DNA of 64,000 nt, from IMG/VR virus record IMGVR_UViG_3300027771_001853, positions 124,001-188,000 of that record, one strand, 5' to 3'. Made by a program: the position numbers and the translations under genes. Under the pieces are notes generated by a model. The model saw only the letters and a list, made by a program, of their open reading frames with translations. It was not told where the DNA came from and did no database searches. Within the stretch, counting starts at the first letter, position 1; the number at the start of each line of letters is the position of its first letter. Shown in pieces: positions 21,733-52,652 of this stretch.

Positions 21733-24700
21733 TATGGTATATATTTAAAGTTAAAATTATCAGTTGTAGTTTGATTCTCTTCCGCTATTTTTGTTATAGA
21801 TTCTTCACAAGAAGGACTACTGGTAGTTCCATAATTAAATTTATGTTTAGCATCTTCAGCTATTTTCGCTAATTCTGAAGACTCGTCAGGTGTTGTTAAT
21901 CCGTTTGGTACTTTATTGTCTGATGTCACAAATCTATCTTTTAAATTCTTTTCAAATAATTCTAATTGGTCAAACCAATATTTTTCTTGTTTAGGGTATT
22001 CTGTAGACCATAACAGTATCTGACTATCCCAAACATTACCTGACTGTACTTTATCTTTTATAGCTTCCCACACACTATCATCCATATCTACTGCCCAATT
22101 ACCGTCATCACCAAAATACTCACTAGGTGTAATGTCTGTGTCTACTAATTTTTTTCCTATAGTAAGATATAACCCACCAACCGAAGAAAGTGAAGACGAC
22201 CAGTGAAAATCTGGTGAAGTTACCCAAGATGTTGGACTTTGGTAGTTTCCTTCTTTAAGAAACTCTACTGGAGCATAACACTGTGGTGGGTCATCAGAAC
22301 ATAACCCTATTACCCCATTTAATGTGTCTGTGAAGTAATTCATTAAATTAGCTAAAAGTTTATAGTCGTGTCCTAATTCACAATCTGTACTGGTTTGGTT
22401 ACTTGTACTAAACACATCTGTAGTTCCAGATAGTTTATATGATGTGTGGCTACCGTCATTGATAAACCCATCACATAAATTATTAACAGTATTTATTTTA
22501 TCTACTAATTTAGTGTACTCTACTTGTGCCTCATTAATCTTGTATGCACTAGAGTCTAAGTCAAGAATAACACTATCTCTAATTTCTTCTACCTGTTCTT
22601 TTAATAATCGTCTTAACTTTCTTTTTTTACTATTACTAGGAGAAACCTCATTAATGTATGTTGTCTGTATTATAGTACCATCACCTTTTATCGTATCAAG
22701 AACCTCATCGAATAAATTGTTACCTCGTTCTTCCCCCATAATCTTACCTATCAATTTCCCATTAAAAGGTGTTAGTGTAGCGGAACCTGAACTACAATCT
22801 ATACAATCGTAATTACCTGTCACATATTCTCTTTGAGCGAACATTAACTGAACCACACCATACCCGTGGGTCCTTTGTATCATTTTTATCTCATTTATGA
22901 CAGTACTGATGTATCCACCAGCTTTACTAACCATATCGTTAAACACTAGATTATATTCTATGTCACCAGTTTCACCACTAGTGGTTAGGGTTGGGTTCAT
23001 TTTATTACCTATTGGTTGACCATCATTAGGTGTAGTATCTTCATCGGCCACGGCTTCCTGTTCCTCCTCTAATCCATTACCTTGGGTACCTAGATTATCA
23101 TATAAATCCTGTAAGAAAGCTTTTTCATCTGGGTCACTGTCGAAAACAGTAAATTGAGCTCTATCATCAAAGGTTTCTGTATTTGCGTAGTAGTTGAATG
23201 ATAGGGCGTTTTGTAGTCTTTCTACCGGTTGTTTAAGTCCTTGACCCCCAATATATTTAAAGTTCATACTTACATTAGCAATCATTGGTTGAACCCCTAT
23301 ACCTTCTGGGTTTAAATCCCAAACTAGTGGGTCATAACTAATTGATACATTATCTATAATAATTTTAGTATTATAAAAATCACCAATTCTAAGTACACAT
23401 ACTGGTGGTGCACCAAAAGCTGTATTAGATGCTTGTTGATTGGAGGATACGTTATCGTCACTCCCCTTTACTGGTATTGTTTTACCTGGTCTTAAACATT
23501 GTTGTAAAAATGTCAATCTAGTATTAAGACCTTCTGGTGTGGTAGAGTGAAAAGCTGGTGAAAAATACTTTAATTTTTCTTTCATACTCGCAAAAGCTAT
23601 CTCATCTTCACCTCTTATCATTTTAAAATAAGAACATTCATCCACACCTAACACTTGTTTAGTTATTTTTCTACGAAGATTACCCGGTACTTTGTCTTTG
23701 GTTATAGTTGGTCTATATGTAGGTCTCTTTGTTGGTTTTTTTGTTATTGTTACCTTACGTTCAATTTTAATTGTTTCTACGTGTACTCTTCTACAGTAGG
23801 CCGCGTTAATAGAATATACTGAATCTGGTAATGATAAATCAGCTGTACAATTAATTCCGTTTATATTAATCTCTTCTCCTGAAGCTTGGGACTCTGGAAA
23901 CCTTAAATCCGCTTTATCATATGCTTTTCGGAATGGGAACTTACCACCTAGTTGGTAGGCTAGTAACATTTTCCTAACCGAATCTATCCTTCTTTTGGAT
24001 AAGTCCACATTATAATCTTTAGTGTTAGGGGAACTTGCACTCCCAATAAAAGATATATCCACCGTAAACTCACCACTAGATAACACTTCCTCCAATTTAA
24101 CCATTAGTTCTGGGAAATTAACATTATACTCTTCTGTTGCTTCAGTAAAGAATGCTTGTAATGCCTCCTGTTTTTGTGTATCTGGTTGTTTTTGATAATA
24201 TACCTTAAGTGTTCCGACATTTCTATCATCTCCAAGATAACTCCCCCATTTGGAACCACCTGCTTCAGCTAAGCTACTATAAGGTACTGTAGATGTCGTT
24301 CTACGGGTACCTGGGTCTGGGTAATCGTTCTCGAAATAAAAACTAAGATTATCATAAGCTGATAAATCCGGTATTTGACTTCCACTATCTTCTGTAAAAG
24401 TTTCTGGTTGTCCTTCTTGAAAGGCCACGAACTCCAGTTCTTCTTTTATCGGTGGGTTTTGGTTTATTATTGTTAGTATGGTTTCCAACTCTGTTCTATC
24501 AAAATCCGGGTAAGTCCTAGATAAATCAAAAATATCATATTCGTAACATCCAGCAAAAAACGAATTAAGAACCTCATTTTCTTGTTCTGTCGTTAACCCA
24601 CCTAATTCTTTATCCACTATTCTGTTTAATACTGAAGGGTGGTCAACAACCACTTTAAATCTAAGATTTCCAATCCTTTCAGTATAGTTGTAAGTGTATA

Positions 24701-29865: not shown

Positions 29866-30354
29866 TTAGTAAACTAATATACATCTGTCTGGTCTTAGTG
29901 TTGCTGTAATATCAGCAATACCATCATTACTATAATCTAAATCATTAAAGTTAACATCCGTTAAGAAACACCCTTGTAGTATCCATTTTTCAACAACAAC
30001 ACCTGTAGGGTCTAACATTTCTAGGTCACAATCTTTTTTGTACCCAGCTGCGTAACCCATTCTACCAGTTACTGACTCGGCATGTAATCTAACCCACTCC
30101 ATTAAAGCTTGTGAAGCAGAAGGACCGATTGGGTCCCTGAATGTAACATTTATAGTATTCCAGACAAATCTACCCCCAACATACGTAGAAGTATTAAGGA
30201 AAGGTATCTCCACTGCATTAACTGTAACTTGTGGTCTAGTAGTCGTAGAAACGTACCACTCGTTAATACCAAGTGATGACGGGAATCTCATAATAAACCT
30301 ATTCTTCTTTTTTGGTTCGTAAGGAATAGGCATTTTCATCAATAAATCGGCCAT
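29866..30354 (-). CDS. Tail tube protein (T4 gp19-like)
   Basis: YEPKKKNRF, WNTINVTFRDPI, LDPTGVVVEKWILQGCF and LRPDRC. Confidence 0.9.
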   Translation of the reverse strand: MADLLMKMPIPYEPKKKNRFIMRFPSSLGINEWYVSTTTRPQVTVNAVEIPFLNTSTYVGGRFVWNTINVTFRDPIGPSASQALMEWVRLHAESVTGRMGYAAGYKKDCDLEMLDPTGVVVEKWILQGCFLTDVNFNDLDYSNDGIADITATLRPDRCILVY

Positions 30355-30427: not shown

Positions 30428-31117
30428 CTACTTAGCTGTCATAACATAAAGCTTATTTTTTTCTTCATCAGGTAAATGTCTCTTCATTTCCTTTATAGCT
30501 TTTATATTCTTTATGTCGTCATCTATAAATATTATCTGGTCAAATGTGTCTAGTAGCGTTTTAACCACCTCCGCTTTTTTCTCATAGTCTGTACCCCCAC
30601 CTAACTCCTTAACTCTTTCAATATCATTTATGGCAAATACCAAATCTCTCGATAATTTATCACCAATTTTTATTAACTCACCATTTTTATTTTTATACAT
30701 TAAAAATTCTTTTAAACCCTCAAAAACAGTGTCTTCCATCCCTCTAGCAGTCAAAATACCTAACTTATAACCCCTAGTTAACAAATCATCCATAATCTCT
30801 AAATTAGCTACTATTGGTTTTCCTGTGGTTATTGAGTTCTTTATAGAGTCTACGTCTTCAAAATCTCTATAATCATAATACTGTCTAGTTTCTGAACTAA
30901 CGTCTTCTTTAGCGTACTCATGTGGTGTTAAGGATACTTCTTCCTCGTCAGTAGGTAATTGTCTATATATGTAAATGCCTTGTGCGGTCACTAAAGTATC
31001 GTCCACATCTAATAATATCAATCTATTAACTGAAGCTATTTCACTTAGATTTTTTTTATTTTTAATATTTTCTACTAAAAATAACAATTGTTTGTTATTA
31101 ATTACTATGTTTTTCAT
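30428..31117 (-). CDS. HAD-superfamily phosphatase-like protein
   Basis: Motif I LLDVDDTL, motif II ILTARG, motif III Lys (EKKAE) and motif IV FIDDD...N. Confidence 0.75.
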   Translation of the reverse strand: MKNIVINNKQLLFLVENIKNKKNLSEIASVNRLILLDVDDTLVTAQGIYIYRQLPTDEEEVSLTPHEYAKEDVSSETRQYYDYRDFEDVDSIKNSITTGKPIVANLEIMDDLLTRGYKLGILTARGMEDTVFEGLKEFLMYKNKNGELIKIGDKLSRDLVFAINDIERVKELGGGTDYEKKAEVVKTLLDTFDQIIFIDDDIKNIKAIKEMKRHLPDEEKNKLYVMTAK

Positions 31118-31142: not shown

Positions 31143-31173
31143 TTGTGTATTAAATAAAAATTTATTATCTTTG
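31143..31173 (+). promoter_or_regulatory. Bacteroidota-type primary sigma promoter (-33 TTG / -7 TAnnTTTG)
   Basis: TTG at 31143-31145, a 20-nt spacer, then TATCTTTG at 31166-31173, 30 nt before the ATG at 31204. Confidence 0.65.
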
Positions 31174-31203
31174 TAGTATTAACTAACTAAACCCACAAAT
31201 AAC

Positions 31204-32211
31204 ATGAAAAAACTATTATCACTACTTATTCTCTTACTTTCCTTTAATACCTTAGTTAAATCACAATTTTCCCCCAACCCGATGGTAACCACGGTAACGA
31301 TAAATAATAGTGTTACCTGTGTTGGTTTGGCGGATGGTAAAGTTACTGTTTATTCGACATATGGTGGTGGTGGTGGTTACCATTACACATTAGAAAGATG
31401 GATGGACTCTACCTTCGGTTGGGTACCTTTAGGACAGAGTCCTTTAAGTACTTTGAACCCTAATGGTAGTTTTACTATGAATTTCACATACGATACTGTT
31501 GTTTTTACAAACTTAGGTGGGGACACAAGTGGATTAACCCATTACAGGGTAATAACACACGACAACTATTGGCCTGGGGTATTTGTATCTAATAACGACA
31601 CCAATTATTTTGACATATATGATTTTACTTTAGTTAATAATCTACCCGTTGGACCTCCACCATCACCATATCAATCACATTACGACTGGTGGGTCGACAC
31701 AACTGGTATGTACCCACCTAATACGATTTTATTCGATTCTTGGAACACCAACACTTACAACCCAGATTGGGACCCGTTTGGGTGTTGGACCGTCTGGATT
31801 ATTAAAGACCCAGTTAATGGTACTTTAATTGATAGTTGTTTATCTATTGGTGGGTGTGGGGGTTACTGGTACACATGGCCTACAACTGGACTCTACTTTG
31901 AAGTCTGTGTGGTAACATGTGGTTACTATATTGATTGGTCTTGTGTATACGATTCTACCGGAATTATGATTACTCCACCACAATATTTCACTAGAGATAC
32001 TTTTTGTCTAACTGTTGGTGTGGGTGGTGTCACGAGTATAGTAGAAGACCAGTCGGAAGAGTCTACTGAGTACAACCCTAATATTTATTTTAATGGAGAG
32101 ACTATCCATGACTTATTAGGTAGGAGATATAATTGTTCTTACTTTGACCTACCTAGAGGTACCTACATAATAAAAAGAAATGAGGAAGTGTGGAAAATTC
32201 ACAAAATTTAG
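31204..32211 (+). CDS. Secreted protein with signal peptide and putative T9SS C-terminal sorting domain
   Basis: Signal peptide MKKLLSLLILLLSFNTLVKS|Q, SprB-like VTCVGLADGKVTV...GGGGYHY, and C-terminus TSIVE...IHDLLGRR...LPRGTYIIK...KIHKI. Confidence 0.65.
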   Translation: MKKLLSLLILLLSFNTLVKSQFSPNPMVTTVTINNSVTCVGLADGKVTVYSTYGGGGGYHYTLERWMDSTFGWVPLGQSPLSTLNPNGSFTMNFTYDTVVFTNLGGDTSGLTHYRVITHDNYWPGVFVSNNDTNYFDIYDFTLVNNLPVGPPPSPYQSHYDWWVDTTGMYPPNTILFDSWNTNTYNPDWDPFGCWTVWIIKDPVNGTLIDSCLSIGGCGGYWYTWPTTGLYFEVCVVTCGYYIDWSCVYDSTGIMITPPQYFTRDTFCLTVGVGGVTSIVEDQSEESTEYNPNIYFNGETIHDLLGRRYNCSYFDLPRGTYIIKRNEEVWKIHKI

Positions 32212-32269
32212 TAACCTAACACCAAAAAGTAACGTATAATATAATATAACCCTTAAAACATAAAAAAAA

Positions 32270-32560
32270 ATGGACTACTTAATAGGATACATCATCATCT
32301 CAATACTTCTAATGATTGTTTTTATCGAAATGAATAAAAATGAACTATATCAAGACATGTGTGACATAAACACAAGATATAACAATAGGTTATTAGAACT
32401 AGTAAAAAATGGAGAATTAACTAATTCTAGATATGAAAGAATGTGTAGAAAGGTAGGGTCTGGTTTTAATCTATATGTGGTCGTACATTTTATAAAAGCC
32501 CCCTTCTTTGCTCCAATGATTTTTATCCTATTTCTATATAACGGCGGAAAACTTCTTTAA
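32270..32560 (+). CDS. Small membrane protein (2 predicted TM segments)
   Basis: Hydrophobic N- and C-terminal segments. Followed by a terminator. Confidence 0.6.
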   Translation: MDYLIGYIIISILLMIVFIEMNKNELYQDMCDINTRYNNRLLELVKNGELTNSRYERMCRKVGSGFNLYVVVHFIKAPFFAPMIFILFLYNGGKLL

Positions 32561-32562
32561 AA

Positions 32563-32588
32563 AAAAAAGACCCATAAGGGTCTTTTTT
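32563..32588. terminator. Bidirectional Rho-independent terminator
   Basis: AAAAAAGACCC-ATAA-GGGTCTTTTTT between convergent genes. Confidence 0.8.
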
Positions 32589-32606: not shown

Positions 32607-33797
32607 TTATGTTCGTGCTCCTGAATTATCTGTAGCTCCGTCATCTCCAGAAGGTAATCCTTCTTCTTCGTCTTCTACATCCATTTCAGTTCCTTCCATA
32701 TTCATGTCCATATCAACCTCGTAAAACTCAGCACTATTTCCATGTTCTTCATAAAATTCTCCACCATCAACGGCTCTTTTTAAACCAGCTTCACTTTCTG
32801 GAGAAGCGTATTCCATACCCTCACCTTCGTCATCTGAGATACCAGTCCCTAACTCTTCATCGTCTTCACCTAGACCAATTTTATCACTCGCTTTACTAGC
32901 TAAAGCTGTACCAAAGGCTGTACCAACTGCATTTCCAACTACTCTTTGCCATTGTTCACTCATTAGTTTTATTTCTTTTTCTACAGATTCGGACATTCCT
33001 TTAGCTGCTTTCTTCATAGATTCTTTTTTGTTACCATCACCATCTAAGTCTAAGTAATCTGGTTTAGGTTTTTTACCTTCTTCCATATCTTCTTCCATAC
33101 CGTCCATATCTTCGTCATGCATTCCATACATTTCTCCCATATCTTCATCAGAACCATCATCTACCATAGACTCTAACATTTCATCATTGTCCATATAACC
33201 CGTTTCATGTTCAGGATAAGGTATGTCTTGTAGAATATCTGAGTCTGGTCTTACACCTCTTTGGTCTTTTCCAGCACCCATAAGTTCTGCAGTCTTTGTC
33301 ATAAAATTAGAAAGTTTTACTATACTATTTTCTAGTTTTTGTTTTGTTGATGGGTCTTTAATATATTCCCACGCTTTTTTAACATGGTTAATTATATTTT
33401 CTATACCTTCTCCAGCTGCAACTCCAGGGTCTCTATTGTATTGTCCTTGCTCTAAAAGTGTGATTTTTTCAGTTTTTATAGCTTCACTAATTAAACTGTA
33501 AGCTTCATTCACTATTTCATCTAATTCGTCTTCTTCTTCTAGACTCAAAACAATTGTGTCATCAACCATTTCTTCACCATCATTGTCTCCACCTTCCATT
33601 CCGTTAGGGTCCATCATCATACCATCTAAATTAGCAAAACCTTCTGGACCACCTAAACATTGTTCCATTAATCTTTCAAATTGTGATTCAGTTACAACAA
33701 TATTTTGTGGTAAGTCGGAGAACGTTTTTTCACCTTCTTGTAATTTTCCACTAGTTTTTTCTACAATTTCCTCTTTTGAGTACTTAAAATCTTTCAT
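32607..33797 (-). CDS. Highly acidic low-complexity protein, probable head-internal / core protein
   Basis: D/E/M/G-rich, with NIVVTESQFERLME, KPDYLDLDGDGNKKESMKKA and many [ILM]-x-E sites. Confidence 0.55.
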   Translation of the reverse strand: MKDFKYSKEEIVEKTSGKLQEGEKTFSDLPQNIVVTESQFERLMEQCLGGPEGFANLDGMMMDPNGMEGGDNDGEEMVDDTIVLSLEEEDELDEIVNEAYSLISEAIKTEKITLLEQGQYNRDPGVAAGEGIENIINHVKKAWEYIKDPSTKQKLENSIVKLSNFMTKTAELMGAGKDQRGVRPDSDILQDIPYPEHETGYMDNDEMLESMVDDGSDEDMGEMYGMHDEDMDGMEEDMEEGKKPKPDYLDLDGDGNKKESMKKAAKGMSESVEKEIKLMSEQWQRVVGNAVGTAFGTALASKASDKIGLGEDDEELGTGISDDEGEGMEYASPESEAGLKRAVDGGEFYEEHGNSAEFYEVDMDMNMEGTEMDVEDEEEGLPSGDDGATDNSGART

Positions 33798-33862: not shown

Positions 33863-36800
33863 TTATATATCTTCAAAGTTAGCACCTGTTGGTGTTATTA
33901 AGAATTCTATGTCTATAAATTCTAATGACCTTGTTGGTTTGATATATATTTTACCTGATAGGGTATTTTGGTCTATCAATGATGGGTCATCCGAAAGTAC
34001 AACTCTAAAGTCCGTTAATCCCCTTTCTCTTCTTATAGAGTCTAAAATTGGGTTAACTAAATCTAGGAATTCGTTTCTTACTTGTTCGTCATTTTGTTCG
34101 AATAGTAATCTAACAGCTACTGCCGATATTAATTTTCTAGCTTGTAGTAACAATCTTCTAACATTAATTCTATCTAAAGCTGATTCTCTAACTTGTAGTG
34201 TTTTATTACCCCAAATTATAGTACCCACATCAGAATAAGTAGCGATTGGATTGATTCTACCTTTGTATAATATGTCTCTCTCGTCTAAAGTCAATTTCTT
34301 TCTAGCTTTAACCGCGTTTACTATACCTCTTGTATAACCTGCCGATGCGAACCATGGGAAGGCTATATTATCTGTTAATGCTATATTCCTCATTACGTCA
34401 TACGTTGGTGGGAGATATAACTGAACATTATTATCATTATCCCTAAGTTGTACCCAAGGATAGTAAGTTGCTGTATAGTTTGAATCTATCCCTGTAGCGT
34501 CTAGATTATCTACAGCTTCTTGTGGTTGTACAATATTAGTTACATTAAACGTATTAGCGTTCATACTATAGTCTGGTGTTGTAGTAACATATAACGAATC
34601 TGCTCTATCAGCTTCTATCATTTCTATAGTTTCTTCAACTAAGTTACTATGGTTAATGTAGTCAATACCTGGTGTAGCGAATACATTTATGTTCACAGCT
34701 TCTGGGTTTTGGAATGTATTGATAGCGTCTAAATAAGCGTAGTAATCTGTATTCGCTGCATCTGTTCCTCTAGTTCTAAATATACCCCAACCTGAAGCGT
34801 TTGGATATTGTGACGTTGAACATGCCCCGTAGTTCCATCCACTTTGTGACAACATGTAAGTGTCTTCATTACTTCTTGTTTTTCTGTATATATCCCATCC
34901 ATCAAACCCACCATATGGTAAGAACGTGAATTTACGTGAGAATAAGTTATAGTATGGATGGTTTGACTGTGTAGGTTCTGTAGCTAAAGAAGCGTTACCA
35001 ACTTCAAACATCGATGTTCCAGTTATACTTGCTGGAGCTGGAGAAGTGAATTTAACAACTGTTGCTCCACTATCCATATGATAACCTTTACAAAGCATCG
35101 ACCAATCATTTAATGTCTGGTTTGTACATAGATTACCGTTAGCTGGCATCGGTTTACCTTTATATTGTAAGAAGTCACTATCTATCCCCATATTATCTGA
35201 GAACCCAAGATATATCCTTCTAAACTTATCACCTGAACTATATGTTGGTGCTGCAAATGGTGGGTCCTGAACTAATTCACCTGGTTGGTCGTAGTGGGTT
35301 TTATATATCGGACAAACACCATCACAACCATTAGCTCTAGTTATGTAACCTTTAAACCCTTCTGGTACCGCGTTCCATCTAGTATCATCATCTTCATGAT
35401 AGTCAGCTACTTGTAACATAATGTACCTACTAAGAAGTTCGTACTCCCCATTAGATGTACCTACTCTTTTAGCCACATAAGAGTTAAGTGTTGGGTTCAT
35501 ACTACAACGTGTGTATTTTTCTAATACTATCGGGTTTGCGTCTGTGTCATAGAAATCACGAACTTGTATATCAAACTCTCTTCTTTCTAGACTTATATTA
35601 ATTATAGATATTTTAACTGTTGTGTTAGCTGCGTCACCATCAGGTATTGTAATAACTCTAAATAGGTCATACACATTTGTACCCCTTAATTCAGAAACAA
35701 CATATGGTGTAGCTGGTGTTTGGAATTCTTCTAAGTAGTACCCCATAGAGTTGGAACCACCTTCTTGTACTGATGGTGAAAACAATGCCTCACATCTTAT
35801 TCCTTTAATCTTACCTTGATTATAACTGTGTGTTAACCAATTTGGGTATATTTCTTCAACAAAAATTGGGACTTCTTTTCTATCTTTATCAAAAGGAGCT
35901 CTACCTAACACTCTTGGTAGGTAATCAGCGTTTCCTTGACCCATAGAAACTTTAAAAGCAAAATTAGTTCCATCATCATTCATAACATCCAAACCAAACG
36001 AAGCGAATGGGTTAGATTGTGATGCGTTATATGTACCACCTGTACAATTATACGTTACACCTGTACTAGAGATACCTGGACTTCCAGCTCCACCACCATA
36101 TTTTGGGTGTGCCCAAGCAGCGTTTGTAGGTACTTCATATACTGGACCACCAGAATCTAGACTACTAAGACCACGAGACCTTAAGGTCGCTACTGTCTTT
36201 CCATCAAAATCTTTAAATGAATGTCCAGAGAATGCACATGTTGAGAACTGTACTGTACCTGAGAATATACCTGTTGAACCAGACCAACTACCATCAGTCA
36301 TTCCGGAAACAGACATATTAAACCCTATACCGTCGTAATTACTATCCGAATTATAATTAAATAACCCGTATAACCATGGTTCGGATGCTGTTGAACACCA
36401 ATCGTCACAGTTAGTACTAAGAGCGTTCTGAGCAGTAACACCACTATAGTAAGGACTCATACCACCACCTTGGAATACTTCTTCTAAACTATCACCTGAT
36501 GATGTACAACCAAAAGTGTAAGAGGCTGTAGCAGCACTAACGAATTTATCGTATTGGGGTGTACCCGGTAAATTAATTGGTTGGTTTGGATAATTTGCTG
36601 GGTCACCAGATACTGAAGGGTCGAAACCTCCTGGGTGACTAGCTTCACTACATAACTCATCAAAGAAAGCAGTTATTTCTTTTCTTAATGATGTTGCTCC
36701 CCCATCAGCTAATGGTATGTTATTATCTATACTTCTAGCGATTAGATTCGTAGAATAGTCTCCAGCTGTTGAAGACCCACCACTAAACATCCATAACCAT

Positions 36801-37270
36801 TCATTTATACCAGTATAAATTTTACCGTCACTTAATCCTACCACTGTACATGGTGAACCTGAAAGTACAAATGAAACCGAACTAGCTGAACATGTTAGAC
36901 CAGTTACTGAATTACAATCTACAGCCCCTTGTGTACATAATTGCCACGCTGGACCTGCATCATAACCAGTGTAACCCAATACCCTAGTTACGAATAACTG
37001 GTTGGATTGGGTTAGATAACTCTTTGCTATGTAAGGTAACTCATACTTTGGGAATGTTGTGTCCACATACTTTTCAGCACTTGTAGCACCAAAATAAGAT
37101 GAGAACTCACTCCAATTAGTTATAAAAATAGGTTCAAAAGCTGGACCTCTTAAAGTCTCACCTGCTAAACCTAATGTTGTTACACCAACACTCTGTGCTA
37201 CGAATGTTAAGTCTTTTTCCGAGGTATACACACCTGGAGATACGAATACTCTATTACTGTTACTTGCCAT
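33863..37270 (-). CDS. Contractile tail sheath protein (gp18-like) with large insertions
   Basis: VSPGVYTSEKD, GPAFEP, SNYTATYYPW, PWFASAGYTRG, RINPI, WGNKTLQ...SALDRINVRRLL and IKPTRSLEFI. Confidence 0.95.
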   Translation of the reverse strand: MASNSNRVFVSPGVYTSEKDLTFVAQSVGVTTLGLAGETLRGPAFEPIFITNWSEFSSYFGATSAEKYVDTTFPKYELPYIAKSYLTQSNQLFVTRVLGYTGYDAGPAWQLCTQGAVDCNSVTGLTCSASSVSFVLSGSPCTVVGLSDGKIYTGINEWLWMFSGGSSTAGDYSTNLIARSIDNNIPLADGGATSLRKEITAFFDELCSEASHPGGFDPSVSGDPANYPNQPINLPGTPQYDKFVSAATASYTFGCTSSGDSLEEVFQGGGMSPYYSGVTAQNALSTNCDDWCSTASEPWLYGLFNYNSDSNYDGIGFNMSVSGMTDGSWSGSTGIFSGTVQFSTCAFSGHSFKDFDGKTVATLRSRGLSSLDSGGPVYEVPTNAAWAHPKYGGGAGSPGISSTGVTYNCTGGTYNASQSNPFASFGLDVMNDDGTNFAFKVSMGQGNADYLPRVLGRAPFDKDRKEVPIFVEEIYPNWLTHSYNQGKIKGIRCEALFSPSVQEGGSNSMGYYLEEFQTPATPYVVSELRGTNVYDLFRVITIPDGDAANTTVKISIINISLERREFDIQVRDFYDTDANPIVLEKYTRCSMNPTLNSYVAKRVGTSNGEYELLSRYIMLQVADYHEDDDTRWNAVPEGFKGYITRANGCDGVCPIYKTHYDQPGELVQDPPFAAPTYSSGDKFRRIYLGFSDNMGIDSDFLQYKGKPMPANGNLCTNQTLNDWSMLCKGYHMDSGATVVKFTSPAPASITGTSMFEVGNASLATEPTQSNHPYYNLFSRKFTFLPYGGFDGWDIYRKTRSNEDTYMLSQSGWNYGACSTSQYPNASGWGIFRTRGTDAANTDYYAYLDAINTFQNPEAVNINVFATPGIDYINHSNLVEETIEMIEADRADSLYVTTTPDYSMNANTFNVTNIVQPQEAVDNLDATGIDSNYTATYYPWVQLRDNDNNVQLYLPPTYDVMRNIALTDNIAFPWFASAGYTRGIVNAVKARKKLTLDERDILYKGRINPIATYSDVGTIIWGNKTLQVRESALDRINVRRLLLQARKLISAVAVRLLFEQNDEQVRNEFLDLVNPILDSIRRERGLTDFRVVLSDDPSLIDQNTLSGKIYIKPTRSLEFIDIEFLITPTGANFEDI

Positions 37271-49206: not shown

Positions 49207-49497
49207 TTATACAAAGTCTGTTCCGTAAAGTACTAGTTCACCATCTATACCTAAAGTACCACCTTGATTTATATATTCATCCGCATGAAATGTTTGCATG
49301 TTTTCAAAGATGCAATAGGTGTCCCCAACTTTGAGTGGGGATGGGTGAGCTCCTAGACTTAACATTTTTAGTAAGTCTTTAGTTCCCGCTACAGTGTGAC
49401 ATAACTGAGTTAACGTCACGCTAGAATAGAAAGTAGTTGGTAGGGGTATGTCCCCACCTTGGAAAACTTCTATTATATTTTTACAATTACAACTCAT
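49207..49497 (-). CDS. Small hypothetical protein
   Basis: 96-aa ORF translationally coupled to the 1051-aa gene. Confidence 0.6.
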   Translation of the reverse strand: MSCNCKNIIEVFQGGDIPLPTTFYSSVTLTQLCHTVAGTKDLLKMLSLGAHPSPLKVGDTYCIFENMQTFHADEYINQGGTLGIDGELVLYGTDFV

Positions 49498-52400
49498 TAC
49501 TTATATAGGTTACCTATTAATGTAGCACTCGCTTTTTTATTGGTGTCTACTCTATTAATAATTATTTGCACTATATCGTTTGGCCCAACGCAGAACGGTA
49601 AAGTTTCTACTATAACATCAGTAATTACCGAATTGGGGTATCTCTTGATGGTAAATGCACTTACATTGTCCACTAAAATCGATTTAAATTTAATACCTTC
49701 ATGCTTCGTAACGTCTATATAAGTGTCAAATCCATCAAAATCTAAGACTGTTGTTGGTACTGGAAAGTTTAACATTACGTCAACAGAATCACCTTCAGTA
49801 TAGTATACCGCTCTTCCTTGGTTACACGGTGTTTCACCACACTGACAGTCTATAAGACCATATCTATCTTTTTCTACTAAGAAATTATGTTGTATTTCAT
49901 CCACACCTAAAGGTTTTAAATAATACCTAAACTGTGATATTGCCCCCATAAATGTCCCTGCAAAATTTTCTGTTATACAATCTACCTCGGAATCCACAAT
50001 TATATCACAACCATCACAACCATCAAACCTAAAAGATTCTAATAAACCTTGTGAACCACCACCCCAACTAATATTAAATGGTACCCCAACTTGTAATTGA
50101 TTTGCTGTATTAAGTTGTCTTGGTATCACTTCTTCAAAATTTCTATCCACGAAAACTGGTCTACCATTAACATAAATTGTTAATGTACCCATTCTAAATT
50201 TCTTTTCCTGTACCCATTTTTTTGTAAAATTTAAATAGGTAGGTAGTTCTATATCATTATACCCAAATACCGAATCTACTCCAGGTATCGGTTCGTGTAT
50301 TAAATCATTTACACCACCTTTATTTTCTAAATCACAACAATCCCAACAATAGTCTCTTTCAAATACAGCACTAACGTAAAGCCAAGGTGCTTCTGTTTGT
50401 CCGGTAAAATCACATATAATATCATCACTAAAACGATTTACTACAGTACATGCTGTTATGTAGGTAAAAGCTGTACCACAATTAGGGTTACCAGAACCTA
50501 CTTTATATGGGTGACCACATCTATCGTAATGTATTGTTTCGTCGGTAGTTCCCGTAACAACACAACCACCAGAGAAATATAAAGCCCTATATCCCACCCT
50601 ATAACCTGTTTCACAATCACCACTTAACATTAGAGCAAAATTATTACTACAACAATCAACATAGTAAGGGTACGTTGAAGCTGAAACACAATCTTCATGT
50701 ACGTTCCCACAGTTATCAGTATGGGTACTACATCCCGCAGTTTGTAGTGTTATAGAATCACCGGAACAAGACGGTTCACAAGTTTCTATACAATTTTCTC
50801 CAGAATAGGGTATCCTAAATTTATTCTCAGCTCTTGTACCCATATAAAAGAATATCCCTTTATTTTCTGGGAACAAATCATTTAATGTGTACCCATCACA
50901 TATATTATTACACCTAGGCCTAATAATGGTTTCCACCGTCCATCCACACTCCACTCTTGTTGGTAGTACCTCATATGGGTAACCTTGTAATTTGTAGAAT
51001 CCTTGATAGAACCCACCATTTAATTCATTATAATAACCTTCACAACTACCAGTAGCACTAGTTATACTGTAATTAATATTATAACTACTATAACCAGTAA
51101 CTGGTTTTAATTTTAAACGACAGTCATAATCGTACGGACTATGTGTTAATCCACTTGGTAGTATGGACCATATATTCATTACGTCATTAGCTGTCCTTGC
51201 ACTTTGTGTTACCACATGCACTGTAACGTCAGATTCATAATAACTACAAGTTGTAGTTTCTGTAACTGGTGAAGTTGTTGTGGTTGTAAATGGTGGCCAA
51301 GCGGTTGTTGTCGTTGTTGTTTCCCCTATCCATCCTTGGTCACAATGAGTACAAGAACTAAATACACCAGCAATTATGGTAGCTTGGCTACCTCCCCAAC
51401 CGGTTGTCCCACTAATTACCCTATAACAATCCGTAGAACAGTCAGGCCATCCCGACTCTAAACGATAATAGCTGTCAGCGGATAATGTTATGTCTAAACA
51501 AGATGAACCCGTTAGAACGACTGTAATCGTCCCACCTGTACTTACACATGGTTCTACCTTATACAATAATTTACATGTTGTTGTAGTTGTGGTTGTTGGT
51601 ACTAATGTGGTAGAACTTGTTGTTGTGGTGAGGTGGGGGTTGTATGTCGTGGTTGTAGTTGTTGGACACAAATCCGAACACACCCCACTAGATGTAGGGT
51701 CACAGCACCCACTAAAAGGACCATTAATCACCAACCCTTGGATGTTAGAACCTATAGTTTGCCCACAACCACTAATAATTTGTCTACAGTGTTCTATACC
51801 ATTAGAGTTTGGTGGTGATAAGACCTCGTAATAACTCCCACCTAATAGTGTGGATGCTGATAAAATCTGGTCAAATTGTACGACATTACCGTTCGCTGAA
51901 CAATTTCTCATCGTATAACAATATCCTGTTATCGGAGGTGAGGTTGTTGTGGTTGTTGTTACCGCTGACCATGGCATTGTTGTACATCCAGAACTTAAGG
52001 ACATAAACGTACTAGCTGTACCCCCAGTAAAATCGGTAACAGTTAATTTGACCCTTGATGGTCCTTTGTAAGTTTGTGCGTATGTATTATCAAAAAATCC
52101 GTACACGGTATCCCCTGTACCAACAAATTGGTATGATTGACCACTGTAACCACCCCAAGAATCACTAGAAGTGTATGCGGTACCAAATGTAGCTAGATTA
52201 AAAGTAGTTCCAGTATATGGGTAAGCTTGTTGTTCCCATTCGTAAGTATATGGTCCGGTACCACCACTTGTAACCCCAGATAACGTGTGGGTAAACGCGG
52301 AACCATTAGTATACTCACAGGCCTTTAACCAATGCATGGTACGTATTGCGTGGTCAAATTGGGAGTGTGCTGGTTGACCGAACCTAAGTGTATTCCAATT

Positions 52401-52652
52401 TGCCGCGGAAACATATAGTCCACCATCACCTCCAGTATCACCAGACATTTTTATTGTATCACCAATAAAGTAATATCCTTCATCGAAAAATGGTGGTTGG
52501 TACCCAAATGCGTTACTAGCATTATTGTAAATATAAGTCAGTGAACCCCCTGGTTGTAGTGGGTTTTCTTGGTCTGATGCCCATATAGCCCCCGGATTAC
52601 AGTAATCTGGATTAGCATATAGTGAAACATGTACGTTACCTGTATAGGCCAT
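49497..52652 (-). CDS. Cys-rich structural protein with poly-Thr linkers and a C-terminal LamG/ConA-like region
   Basis: Several T4-T8 runs. C-terminus GWTVETII...GTLTIYVNGRPV...ISWGGG...FMGAISQFRYYLKPL...EIQHNF. Confidence 0.6.
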   Translation of the reverse strand: MAYTGNVHVSLYANPDYCNPGAIWASDQENPLQPGGSLTYIYNNASNAFGYQPPFFDEGYYFIGDTIKMSGDTGGDGGLYVSAANWNTLRFGQPAHSQFDHAIRTMHWLKACEYTNGSAFTHTLSGVTSGGTGPYTYEWEQQAYPYTGTTFNLATFGTAYTSSDSWGGYSGQSYQFVGTGDTVYGFFDNTYAQTYKGPSRVKLTVTDFTGGTASTFMSLSSGCTTMPWSAVTTTTTTSPPITGYCYTMRNCSANGNVVQFDQILSASTLLGGSYYEVLSPPNSNGIEHCRQIISGCGQTIGSNIQGLVINGPFSGCCDPTSSGVCSDLCPTTTTTTYNPHLTTTTSSTTLVPTTTTTTTCKLLYKVEPCVSTGGTITVVLTGSSCLDITLSADSYYRLESGWPDCSTDCYRVISGTTGWGGSQATIIAGVFSSCTHCDQGWIGETTTTTTAWPPFTTTTTSPVTETTTCSYYESDVTVHVVTQSARTANDVMNIWSILPSGLTHSPYDYDCRLKLKPVTGYSSYNINYSITSATGSCEGYYNELNGGFYQGFYKLQGYPYEVLPTRVECGWTVETIIRPRCNNICDGYTLNDLFPENKGIFFYMGTRAENKFRIPYSGENCIETCEPSCSGDSITLQTAGCSTHTDNCGNVHEDCVSASTYPYYVDCCSNNFALMLSGDCETGYRVGYRALYFSGGCVVTGTTDETIHYDRCGHPYKVGSGNPNCGTAFTYITACTVVNRFSDDIICDFTGQTEAPWLYVSAVFERDYCWDCCDLENKGGVNDLIHEPIPGVDSVFGYNDIELPTYLNFTKKWVQEKKFRMGTLTIYVNGRPVFVDRNFEEVIPRQLNTANQLQVGVPFNISWGGGSQGLLESFRFDGCDGCDIIVDSEVDCITENFAGTFMGAISQFRYYLKPLGVDEIQHNFLVEKDRYGLIDCQCGETPCNQGRAVYYTEGDSVDVMLNFPVPTTVLDFDGFDTYIDVTKHEGIKFKSILVDNVSAFTIKRYPNSVITDVIVETLPFCVGPNDIVQIIINRVDTNKKASATLIGNLYK

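What the first reader, a model, noticed from the sequence alone, without database searches (positions are those of the whole stretch)
31143..32588. Counter-oriented moron encoding a phage cargo for the host type IX secretion system
Seen in sequence: a two-gene plus-strand cassette is inserted between the sheath and tube regions, with its own TTG-N20-TATCTTTG promoter and terminator. Gene 1 has a Sec signal peptide with Gln at +1, an SprB-like N-terminal repeat and a C-terminal I.DLLGR...LP.G.YII...K segment. Established knowledge: the TAnnTTTG promoter, the +1 Gln rule and this CTD pattern are Bacteroidota hallmarks of T9SS substrates. Inference: the phage exports a protein to the infected cell surface via the host T9SS, for superinfection exclusion, receptor masking or altered adhesion, possibly helped by the 2-TM protein. 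This also points to a Bacteroidota host.
Basis: partly seen in the sequence, partly recalled or inferred. Interest (0 to 1): 0.7.

Follow-up and report, generated by a model that had tools for sequence, protein, structure and literature searches.

The report
Phage cargo with short T9SS signal
A marine jumbo phage carries a self-contained two-gene insert whose first protein has a signal peptide, an SprB-type repeat and a shortened form of the Bacteroidota type IX secretion tail, so it is probably exported through the host's secretion machine, although standard domain models miss the tail.

Summary
A plus-strand cassette (gene 1 at 31204-32211, gene 2 at 32270-32560) sits between the minus-strand sheath and tube genes. 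It has a conserved TTG-N20-TATCTTTG element and a conserved hairpin terminator.

Gene 1 has a signal peptide with invariant Gln at +1 and one genuine SprB-type repeat.

But the last ~50-58 aa belong to a compact C-terminal module that is found on:
- two other signal-peptide proteins of this phage;
- proteins of related phage contigs;
- secreted proteins in 60 of 401 sampled Flavobacteriales genomes, nearly all of them small. All 20 checked have canonical CTD proteins; 17 have SprA, and PorV was found in the three searched.

Profile-profile comparison links this module to type A CTDs (94% probability). It has the layout of the "short CTDs" shown to be processed in Prevotella intermedia. A modelled complex with a Flavobacteriales PorV scores 0.90, against 0.00 for controls.

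The phage also encodes canonical type A and type B CTD proteins elsewhere.

Verdict: gene 1 is probably T9SS cargo and the host is a Flavobacteriales bacterium. The biological role (exclusion, masking) and any part for the 2-TM protein remain untested.

The parts
31143..31173 (+). Bacteroidota-type promoter candidate: -33 TTG (31143-31145), 20-nt spacer, -7 TATCTTTG (31166-31173)
   Evidence: Read directly from the sequence. It is the most conserved block of the intergenic region in 5 related loci. It is one of 10 such motifs that lie intergenic, correctly oriented and 4-43 nt before a start codon, out of 35 in the genome.
31204..32211 (+). Gene 1: a 335-aa exported protein, probable T9SS cargo
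   Evidence: ORF. Its full-length homologues are five proteins of 73-100% identity, all from phage-like contigs.
31204..31263 (+). Sec signal peptide (aa 1-20), predicted cleavage VKS|Q with Gln at +1
   Evidence: Sequence. Q21 is invariant. A hydrophobicity heuristic flags it. The Gln +1 preference of Bacteroidota signal peptidase I substrates is established knowledge.
31291..31590 (+). One SprB-type Ig-like repeat unit (aa ~30-129), with an insertion of about 22 aa
   Evidence: The profile search finds 58 other proteins (the ten scanned all carry SprB repeats), all matching only aa ~21-100, with E down to 5.5e-82. hhalign against an SprB-unit profile gives 95.9%, P 5.6e-9. Pfam PF13573 itself is below cut-off.
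31591..32034 (+). Orphan domain rich in Cys, Trp and Tyr (aa ~130-277)
   Evidence: No match in Pfam, NCBIfam, PHROGs, PDB sequences or 1.84 billion representative proteins. Most of the nine invariant cysteines lie here. AF2 predicts beta strands at low confidence.
32035..32208 (+). Short type-A-like T9SS C-terminal domain (aa 278-335). Putative cleavage motif VT|SI; motif B IHDLLGRR; motif D RGTYII; motif E VWKIHKI
   Evidence: Homologous to the tails of two other phage proteins and of Flavobacteriales proteins. The pooled tails match a type A CTD profile at 94.4%, P 9e-8, and at 92.3% with the tool's hhalign. The motif layout is that of the published short CTDs (PMC11969387). The PorV complex model scores 0.90 against 0.00 for controls.
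32270..32560 (+). Gene 2: a 96-aa protein with two predicted transmembrane segments, function unknown
   Evidence: ORF. It is co-conserved downstream of gene 1 in relatives. Only 76-100% identical homologues exist. There are no family matches above noise.
32563..32588 (.). Hairpin terminator (A-run, GACCC stem, T-run) between convergent genes; probably bidirectional
   Evidence: dG -14.2 kcal/mol, z -3.1. The stem is invariant and the loop varies in L002 and L003.
30428..31117 (-). Flanking HAD-like phosphatase or PNK-like gene. Like the cassette, it has no counterpart between sheath and tube in immuto phages.
   Evidence: PF11019 at 26.1 bits and phrog_415. Gene order in immuto.
32607..33797 (-). 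Flanking acidic 396-aa protein of unknown function, convergent with gene 2
   Evidence: ORF. No family match.
29866..30354 (-). Tail tube protein (gp19-like), one boundary of the inserted block
   Evidence: PF06841, E 3.9e-5. The only DNA-level match to immuto phages lies here.
33863..37270 (-). Tail sheath protein (1135 aa), the other boundary of the inserted block
   Evidence: PF04984 and PF17482.

Best explanation
Gene 1 encodes a secreted protein that the phage routes through the host's type IX secretion system (T9SS).

Proposed mechanism:
1. The cassette is transcribed as its own unit from a host-type (Bacteroidota sigma-A) promoter and ends at a hairpin terminator.
2. The Sec signal peptide takes the protein to the periplasm and is cut before Gln21.
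3. The last ~58 aa form a shortened type A CTD. It keeps the cleavage-site motif (VT|SI) and motifs B (IHDLLGRR), D (RGTYII) and E (VWKIHKI), but lacks the N-terminal YPNP strands of the canonical 70-80-aa domain.
4. This short CTD is recognised by the T9SS and PorV. The protein crosses the outer membrane and the tail is probably removed near T277.
5. What remains is a mature protein of about 257 aa, made of one SprB-type Ig-like repeat plus an orphan Cys/Trp-rich domain. It would be either on the cell surface or released.

The host is a T9SS-positive, small-genome marine member of the Flavobacteriales.

What is shown: the anatomy, the homologies, the conservation, and the presence of a T9SS in the candidate host group. 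What is inferred: transcription, export, cleavage, and every downstream role such as surface remodelling or exclusion.
For: The tail is a modular, strictly C-terminal unit, always paired with a signal peptide carrying Gln at +1:
- It occurs on three unrelated proteins of this phage: gene 1; a 432-aa thioredoxin-like protein at genome 35225-36523; and a 172-aa protein at genome 47581-48099.
- It occurs on further proteins of related phage contigs.
- It occurs on TlpA-like, BNR-like and small Cys-rich proteins of Flavobacteriales.

Homology:
- Gene 1 tails against the other phage tails: 95.6%, P 1.3e-8.
- Gene 1 tails against the bacterial tails: 98.1%, P 6.7e-14. Plain BLASTP also hits only the tail.
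- Pooled tails against a 35-sequence type A CTD profile: 94.4%, P 9e-8, score 37.0. The best of 200 column shuffles scores 17.3. The tool's own hhalign gives 92.3%. The same tails against an SprB-unit control give only 31%.
- In three T9SS-rich genomes, 3 of the 4 best in-frame hits of the tail profile fall inside canonical TIGR04183 CTDs.

T9SS in the carrier genomes:
- 20 of 20 have 24-51 canonical CTD proteins each.
- 17 of 20 have SprA.
- PorV is present in the three genomes searched.

Published precedent:
- P. intermedia short CTDs are 43-55 aa long, with cleavage motif PT/GI, motif B with Gly plus a basic residue, motif D GxY-I and a basic motif E. They are predicted to form one 3-stranded sheet, and mass spectrometry shows them cleaved and glycosylated (PMC11969387).
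- The last 22 aa of the Hbp35 CTD are sufficient for GFP secretion (PMC10202324).

Structure models:
- The AF2 model of the gene 1 tail has three short strands, with pLDDT 74-79 over residues 21-57.
- The modelled complex with PorV of a carrier genome has a median ipSAE of 0.90 against 0.00 for the best of 3 controls. That mark was reached by 58 of 80 solved complexes and 2 of 110 mismatched pairs. The runs agree in at least 92% of contacts and partner pLDDT is at least 77. The contacts centre on motifs B, D and E.

Phage context:
- The phage also encodes a canonical type A CTD protein (1321 aa, PF18962, 44 bits) and a type B CTD protein (176 aa, PF13585, 49.5 bits).
- The promoter and terminator are conserved.
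Against: - The curated models PF18962 and TIGR04183 do not match gene 1, even at E <= 10. My unfiltered CTD HMM gives noise.
- A profile of the gene 1 tail alone found no CTDs in three genomes. Its hhalign probability to CTDs is only 35-49%.
- Gene 1's tail is the most divergent member of the module. Its lead-in is longer (58 aa), and the spacing between motifs B and D is longer than in the P. intermedia short CTDs.
- The full-length AF2 model is poor (pLDDT 41.6). Foldseek with the tail model finds nothing.
- The PorV pass may reflect the model's memory of solved PorV-cargo complexes. It used my own alignment, and the PorV comes from a candidate host group, not the known host.
- No RNA data exist for this phage.
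- No short CTD has been tested outside Prevotella.
Confidence: 0.68

Rival explanations
1. Gene 1 is exported by Sec only and stays in the periplasm or on a membrane. The conserved tail is a small independent folding, anchoring or binding unit of streamlined Flavobacteriales. It shares ancestry with CTDs but is no longer a T9SS signal.
For: No curated CTD model matches. The N-terminal strands of the canonical domain are missing. The main bacterial carriers are TlpA/ResA-like thiol-disulfide oxidoreductases, which classically act in the periplasm. No experiment bears on this module.
Against: The tail keeps exactly the parts reported as needed for secretion and PorV binding: motifs B, D and E and the C-terminal basic residues. 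It always sits at the extreme C-terminus after a T|(G/A/S)-I lead-in that resembles the PorU cleavage motif. The PorV model passes its controls. P. gingivalis Hbp35, as I recall, combines a thioredoxin-like motif with a CTD, so a T9SS-secreted thioredoxin is not odd (my own knowledge, not tested here).
Confidence: 0.2
2. Gene 1 is a virion protein, such as an Ig-like decoration or tail accessory. Its place between sheath and tube reflects a structural role, and the hydrophobic N-terminus is not a cleaved signal peptide.
For: It lies inside the tail morphogenesis block. Ig-like domains are common on phage structural proteins. Weak SprB-like matches also occur in two long phage proteins; the one whose N-terminus I read has no signal peptide.
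Against: It is on the opposite strand, with its own host-type promoter and terminator. Immuto phages have no gene between sheath and tube. It has a textbook signal peptide with invariant Gln at +1, invariant cysteines that fit an oxidising compartment, and a tail shared with bacterial secreted proteins. There is no PHROG structural match.
Confidence: 0.07
3. The C-terminal resemblance is chance or compositional, for example a generic beta-hairpin L..G.Y motif that SprB repeats also have, and means nothing for sorting.
For: Gene 1 alone scores at noise level with HMMs. Its tail also aligns weakly to an SprB unit (P 0.004-0.007).
Against: None of 300 column shuffles reached the score of the gene 1 tail alone, none of 300 the nine-sequence pooled alignment, and none of 200 the enlarged pooled alignment. 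The tail is homologous to tails in 60 bacterial genomes, with E down to 1.9e-18. The CTD profile is matched far better than the SprB unit.
Confidence: 0.03

Closest known systems
Short type A CTDs of Prevotella intermedia T9SS cargo (Open Biol 2025, PMC11969387)
   Same: Length class (43-55 aa there; 43-58 aa here). A T|(G/A/S)-I lead-in like the PT/GI cleavage motif. Motif B with a conserved Gly followed by a basic residue, motif D GxY followed by Ile, and a basic motif E at the very C-terminus. A predicted three-stranded sheet. Predicted PorV binding through motifs B, D and E.
   Different: It is found here in marine Flavobacteriales and their phages, not in Prevotella; that paper calls P. 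intermedia the only species seen with short CTDs. The spacers between the cleavage motif and motif B, and between motifs B and D, are somewhat longer. Motif B has Phe or His as often as Tyr. No cleavage or glycosylation data exist.
Canonical T9SS type A CTD (PF18962 / TIGR04183)
   Same: C-terminal position after a Sec signal peptide. Profile-profile homology of 92-94%. Coexists with 24-51 canonical CTD proteins per genome in the carrier bacteria.
   Different: About 20-25 residues shorter. [quoted passage not shown]
Phage-encoded T9SS cargo reported from metagenomes: 'Cryophage' (Nat Commun 2020, PMC7468147) and crAss-BACON contigs (Viruses 2019, PMC6949934)
   Same: Phage genes that carry T9SS sorting domains and are proposed to hijack the host system, possibly for competition or superinfection effects.
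   Different: Those carry canonical type A domains that standard models detect. Here gene 1 has the short form, and the same phage combines short type A, canonical type A and type B signals. No case, including this one, has been tested experimentally.
SprB and SprB-repeat adhesins of gliding Bacteroidota (PF13573)
   Same: Gene 1 has one bona fide SprB-type repeat unit directly after the signal peptide. Metagenomic proteins P0025 and P0027 have the same layout: signal peptide, SprB repeats, then a type A CTD.
   Different: There is a single repeat with an insertion of about 22 aa, instead of tens of repeats. SprB itself uses a type B CTD (my own knowledge). The remainder of gene 1 has no relatives.
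Phage morons (independent promoter-gene-terminator units in lambdoid phages)
   Same: An autonomous transcription unit in opposite orientation, placed between morphogenesis genes that are adjacent in a relative.
   Different: It sits in a large, probably lytic myovirus with 28 such plus-strand islets. The cassette is conserved in position across the clade.

Membership tests
T9SS type A CTD (PF18962 / TIGR04183) | Match to the curated family HMM above its cut-off | tested here: not met
   No hit for gene 1 at E <= 1 (Pfam) or E <= 10 (NCBIfam). Six-frame searches of the genome with both models at E <= 10 hit other genes only. My own unfiltered CTD HMM scores -0.8 to 2.1 bits.
T9SS type A CTD (PF18962 / TIGR04183) | Domain at the extreme C-terminus of a protein that has an N-terminal Sec signal peptide | tested here: met
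   The tail ends at the stop codon. The signal peptide is MKKLLSLLILLLSFNTLVKS|Q with invariant Q21.
T9SS type A CTD (PF18962 / TIGR04183) | Conserved motifs B, D and E in order | tested here: met
   hhalign aligns IHDLLGRR, LPRGTYII and VWKIHKI with the corresponding CTD columns. The motif definitions come from PMC10202324 and PMC11969387.
T9SS type A CTD (PF18962 / TIGR04183) | Seven-stranded Ig-like beta-sandwich | tested here: not met
   Only ~50-58 aa are available. The AF2 tail model shows three short strands. Foldseek finds no PDB match.
Short type A CTD (P. intermedia type, PMC11969387) | 43-55 aa from a T/x|G/A/S-Ile cleavage-site motif to the C-terminus | tested here: met
   Gene 1 has GVT|SIVED followed by 58 aa, slightly long. 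Phage p172 has NPT|GIEEL and 43 aa. Bacterial tails have 47 aa. G275, T277, I279 and E281 are invariant in gene 1's family.
Short type A CTD (P. intermedia type, PMC11969387) | Motif B Gly followed by a basic residue; motif D GxY then Ile; a basic motif E | tested here: met
   DLLGRR, GTYII and KIHKI in gene 1. D, G and I are invariant, and R, P, G and K nearly invariant, across 22 tails.
Short type A CTD (P. intermedia type, PMC11969387) | Single three-stranded sheet that docks into PorV through motifs B, D and E | tested here: met
   The AF2 model has strands at tail residues 23-25, 43-45 and 51-53, with pLDDT 74-79. The PorV complex model scores 0.90 against 0.00 for the best of 3 controls; that mark was reached by 58 of 80 solved complexes and 2 of 110 mismatched pairs. 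Contacts are at tail residues 24-33, 39-46 and 51-57. These are models only.
Short type A CTD (P. intermedia type, PMC11969387) | T9SS-dependent secretion with removal of the CTD | not testable with these tools
   Needs expression in wild-type and T9SS-mutant strains, and mass spectrometry of the mature C-terminus.
SprB repeat (PF13573) | Match to the Pfam model above its cut-off | tested here: not met
   15.8 bits against a cut-off of 28. 20.3 bits in the six-frame search.
SprB repeat (PF13573) | Homology to repeat units of bona fide SprB-repeat proteins | tested here: met
   The profile of gene 1's family finds 58 other proteins through aa ~21-100 only; 9 of the 10 scanned carry SprB repeats. 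Their Pfam SprB scores reach 162 bits. hhalign to an SprB-unit profile gives 95.9%.
Phage moron | Own promoter and terminator, independent orientation, absent from the same position in a relative | tested here: met
   Transcription itself was not observed, because no RNA runs exist.

The most novel reading that the evidence does not exclude
The phage carries a whole T9SS secretome of at least five proteins: three with short type A tails, one with a canonical type A tail and one with a type B tail. Two of them are copies of host secreted proteins. During infection it uses this set to rebuild the surface of streamlined marine Flavobacteriales. In this reading gene 1 is a phage-specific SprB-like surface protein that masks or replaces the receptor and blocks superinfection. 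The short CTD would then be a general compact sorting signal, widespread in marine Flavobacteriales and invisible to current domain models. If so, the T9SS cargo sets of these abundant bacteria and their phages are systematically undercounted.
Probability: 0.25. Interest if true: 0.75.

Novelty: new member of a known kind. Interest (0 to 1): 0.58.

Why it matters
If gene 1 is T9SS cargo, three things follow.

- It adds to the few metagenomic hints that phages of Bacteroidota load their own proteins onto the host's type IX secretion system. No such case has been tested.
- Short CTDs, so far described only in Prevotella intermedia, would also occur in abundant small-genome marine Flavobacteriales and in their jumbo phages. 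PF18962 and TIGR04183 miss them, so cargo inventories built on those models are incomplete.
- It narrows the host of an uncultured 298-kb marine phage, seen in at least 20 marine metagenome runs, to T9SS-positive, small-genome Flavobacteriales.

It also gives a compact tail of about 45-58 aa that can be tested directly as a secretion tag.

Tried and rejected
- Curated HMMs (Pfam, NCBIfam, PHROGs) on gene 1 and gene 2: nothing useful beyond a sub-threshold SprB hit.
- tblastn of gene 1 against 50,697 phage records: no match.
- AF2 of full-length gene 1 with 5 sequences: pLDDT 41.6, unusable.
- Foldseek of the tail model against the PDB: no hit with E < 3.
- PDB sequence search with the family profile: noise.
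- ESM Atlas feature search of the tail and of the middle domain: leads only, scores 0.83-0.92. Por_Secre_tail clusters appear at rank 52 or lower.
- Profile of the gene 1 tail alone against three T9SS-rich genomes: the best hits were unrelated cytoplasmic proteins.
- Idea that the tail is half an SprB repeat: weaker than the CTD match. For the gene 1 tail alone, P is 0.004-0.007 against SprB and 2e-4 against CTD; for the pooled tails, 31% against 94%.
- Test for a CTD swap between the ~600-aa short-tail proteins and the ~640-aa canonical-CTD proteins of the same genomes: the two families are not homologous, so the test says nothing.
Relatives cannot be drawn for a virus record.
- TAnnTTTG alone as promoter evidence: not enriched genome-wide. 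The sigma-70 consensus scan is uninformative for Bacteroidota and missed the terminator.
- RNA evidence: no RNA runs hold the phage.
- A holin or spanin reading of the gene pair: rejected, because gene 1 has no lipobox and no lytic domain.
Full report
**Setting.** The window is bases 124001-188000 of a 297,623-bp virus record judged 93% complete, with 34.7% G+C. Its only DNA-level relatives among deposited phages are the Flavobacterium immuto phages, and the match lies in the tail tube gene. The same sequence is held by at least 20 marine metagenome runs from many studies, and by no RNA run.

- Gene 1 (31204-32211, +, 335 aa) and gene 2 (32270-32560, +, 96 aa) lie in a long run of minus-strand genes.
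- The flanking minus-strand genes are a 1135-aa sheath (33863-37270), an acidic 396-aa protein (32607-33797), a HAD-like protein (30428-31117) and a gp19-like tube protein (29866-30354).
- In immuto phages the sheath and tube genes are adjacent. So four genes, including the cassette, have been added in this lineage.
- The cassette sits in the same place in a 301.8-kb and a 29.7-kb metagenomic contig, so the insertion is old.
- Counter-oriented islets are common in this genome: 28 plus-strand blocks.

**Promoter and terminator.**
- TTG (31143-31145), a 20-nt spacer and TATCTTTG (31166-31173) lie 30 nt before the ATG.
- TAnnTTTG alone is at chance frequency in the genome.
- The two-part motif occurs 35 times against about 29 in shuffles. 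However, 10 of the 35 are intergenic, correctly oriented and 4-43 nt upstream of a start codon.
- In five related loci, the block from TTG to TATCTTTGTAGTA is the most conserved part of the spacer.
- The hairpin at 32563-32588 (dG -14.2 kcal/mol, z -3.1) keeps its stem in relatives while the loop changes. It lies between convergent genes and has A and T runs on either side, so it is probably bidirectional.

**Gene 1, N-terminus and middle.**
- The signal peptide MKKLLSLLILLLSFNTLVKS|Q has an invariant Gln at +1.
- An exhaustive profile search of 1.84 billion representative proteins found 58 proteins besides gene 1's own cluster. All of them match only aa ~21-100.
- Nine of the ten scanned carry SprB repeats. 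Some, such as P0025 and P0027, have the layout signal peptide, SprB repeats, Por_Secre_tail.
- hhalign of aa 21-130 to an SprB-unit profile gives 95.9%. Pfam's own model stays below its cut-off.
- The middle region (aa ~130-277), rich in Cys, Trp and Tyr, has no relatives anywhere.

**The C-terminus: the direct test fails.**
- PF18962 and TIGR04183 give no match for gene 1 at E <= 1 and E <= 10 respectively; the six-frame genome searches with both models ran at E <= 10.
- A CTD HMM that I built from 35 real CTDs and ran without filters gives -0.8 to 2 bits.
- Only hhalign of the last 50 alignment columns gave a weak signal: score 21.5, P 2e-4, 46% probability, reached by 0 of 300 column shuffles.

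**The turn.** A scan of the phage proteome for signal peptides showed two other exported proteins that end in the same way.
- p432 (genome 35225-36523): ...IFDVLGREWKVDFIDLPIGMYIINNNKIFKTK
- p172 (genome 47581-48099)...NPTGIEELMKNEGANNVMYDLMGREVINPTKGVMYIRNQKKFIIVK.

Related phage contigs carry the tail on further proteins.

A profile of nine tails (alignment A5) was then searched in 401 Flavobacteriales genomes.
- It matched 60 genomes, with E down to 1.9e-18.
- Nearly all the matching genomes are 0.9-2.2 Mb in size.

The bacterial carriers have these properties.
- They end exactly at the tail and have signal peptides with Gln at +1.
- They are TlpA/ResA-like thioredoxins, BNR-like proteins of about 600 aa, and a 176-aa protein that is 51% identical to phage p172.
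- The TlpA-like family is abundant in marine metagenomes. NCBI names it only as a disulfide reductase.
- The curated CTD models do not call these tails. The best case is one TIGR04183 hit of 12.8 bits against a cut-off of 23.

**Relation of the module to T9SS CTDs.**
- Gene 1 tails against the other phage tails: 95.6%, P 1.3e-8.
- Gene 1 tails against the bacterial tails: 98.1%, P 6.7e-14.
- All tails against the type A CTD profile: 94.4%, P 9e-8, score 37.0. Shuffles average 9 with a maximum of 17.3. The tool's hhalign gives 92.3%.
- The same tails against an SprB unit: 31%.
- In three T9SS-rich genomes the tail profile gave only E ~0.3-1 hits, but 3 of the 4 hits in real reading frames lie inside canonical TIGR04183 CTDs.
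- Carrier genomes have SprA (17 of 20), 24-51 canonical CTD proteins each and PorV.

**Literature.**
- A 2025 paper (PMC11969387) divides the T9SS cargo of Prevotella intermedia into long CTDs and short CTDs of 43-55 aa.
  - The short ones have a PT/GI cleavage motif, a motif B with an invariant Gly and a preferred basic residue, a motif D GxY-Ile and a basic motif E.
  - They are predicted to form one three-stranded sheet, equivalent to strands 3, 6 and 7 of long CTDs, that docks into PorV.
  - Mass spectrometry shows they are cleaved and glycosylated.
  - The paper calls P. intermedia the only species seen with short CTDs.
- A review (PMC10202324) notes that the last 22 residues of the Hbp35 CTD, which contain motifs D and E, are sufficient for GFP secretion.
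- The present tails have this anatomy. Gene 1 reads GVT|SIVED...IHDLLGRR...RGTYII...VWKIHKI and is 58 aa long. p172 has 43 aa and the bacterial tails 47 aa.

**Structure models.**
- AF2 of the gene 1 tail with 22 sequences gives three short strands, with pLDDT 74-79 for residues 21-57.
- A modelled complex of this tail with PorV from a carrier genome has a median score of 0.90 against 0.00 for the best of three controls.
  - That mark was reached by 58 of 80 solved complexes and 2 of 110 mismatched pairs.
  - The runs agree in at least 92% of contacts, and partner pLDDT is at least 77.
  - The tightest contacts are at motif B (tail residues 24-30), motif D (41-46) and motif E (51-57).
  - This shows likeness to known CTD-PorV binding. 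It does not show binding, and the model may be drawing on solved PorV-cargo structures.

**The phage as a whole.** Outside the window it encodes a 1321-aa protein with a canonical type A CTD (PF18962, 44 bits) and a 176-aa protein with a type B CTD (PF13585, 49.5 bits). Both have signal peptides. Phage-encoded T9SS sorting domains have been reported before from metagenomes (PMC7468147 and PMC6949934) but have never been tested.

**Conclusion.** Gene 1 most likely encodes T9SS cargo that carries a short type-A-like CTD (confidence about 0.68). The host is almost certainly a T9SS-positive, small-genome marine member of the Flavobacteriales. The main rival is that the short tail no longer works as a T9SS signal and gene 1 is simply a Sec-exported protein (about 0.2). 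A structural role (about 0.07) or chance resemblance (about 0.03) is unlikely. Nothing here tests what the mature SprB-like protein does. Nothing tests whether gene 2 takes part; its only relatives are in the same phage clade.

Noticed in passing
G000:C1:34671-48099 (outside the window; locus L054): A cluster of minus-strand genes for signal-peptide proteins: a 184-aa protein; p432 (thioredoxin-like WCGPC motif plus short CTD); a 445-aa protein; a 1321-aa protein with a canonical PF18962 CTD; and p172 (short CTD, 51% identical to a Flavobacteriales protein). It looks like a secretome island of the phage.
   Followed up: partly
G000:C1:290040-291744 (outside the window; locus L055): A 176-aa protein with a type B T9SS CTD (PF13585, 49.5 bits). 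It sits next to two other signal-peptide proteins, one of which has a PKD_6 domain. Type B cargo normally needs a cognate PorP/SprF-like partner, and I did not look for one.
   Followed up: partly
Proteins P0153, P0165, P0174, P0182 and others (homologues of L085:1501-2166): Homologous TlpA-like proteins of marine Flavobacteriales carry a second short C-terminal variant (..T(E/A)IKE..LLKITDLLGRETK..LFYIYDDGTVEKRIVIE) in place of the LPKGxYII..KVFKTK tail. So short tails are swapped between homologues.
   Followed up: no
401 Flavobacteriales genomes: Strong matches to the short tail are almost confined to genomes of 0.9-2.2 Mb. The few hits in genomes of 3.4 Mb or more are weak (E ~1e-3). The module may be linked to genome streamlining.
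   Followed up: no
Protein P0010 (165 aa, on a 1462-bp ENA contig): Its first 58 residues are identical to gene 1 (signal peptide and the start of the SprB repeat, up to GGGGG). After that the sequence is unrelated. It is either a chimeric assembly or a recombinant with a different cargo body.
   Followed up: no
window 33863-37270 (-): The sheath protein is 1135 aa, against 709 aa in the immuto phages (a 2130-nt gene). The Pfam sheath domains cover only residues ~838-1123, so there is a large N-terminal or internal expansion of unknown nature.
   Followed up: no
G000 genome-wide, e.g. 87387-87416 (-) and 23306-23335 (+): Ten intergenic TTG-N18-21-TAnnTTTG motifs lie 4-43 nt before start codons. 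Some share the TTGT.(C/T)ATTAAATAAA core with the gene 1 promoter. This may be a set of host-RNA-polymerase promoters of the phage.
   Followed up: partly
window 49497-52652 (-), and G000:C1:109353-109436 (-): Weak SprB-repeat matches (20-26 bits, below cut-off) in two long minus-strand proteins. The window protein starts MAYTG..., so it has no signal peptide. SprB-like Ig units may also be used in virion proteins of this phage.
   Followed up: partly
window 30428-31117 (-): A HAD-superfamily gene (DUF2608, or the phosphatase part of a polynucleotide kinase) lies between the cassette and the tube gene. That is an unusual neighbour for tail genes, and it too is absent from this position in the immuto phages.
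   Followed up: no
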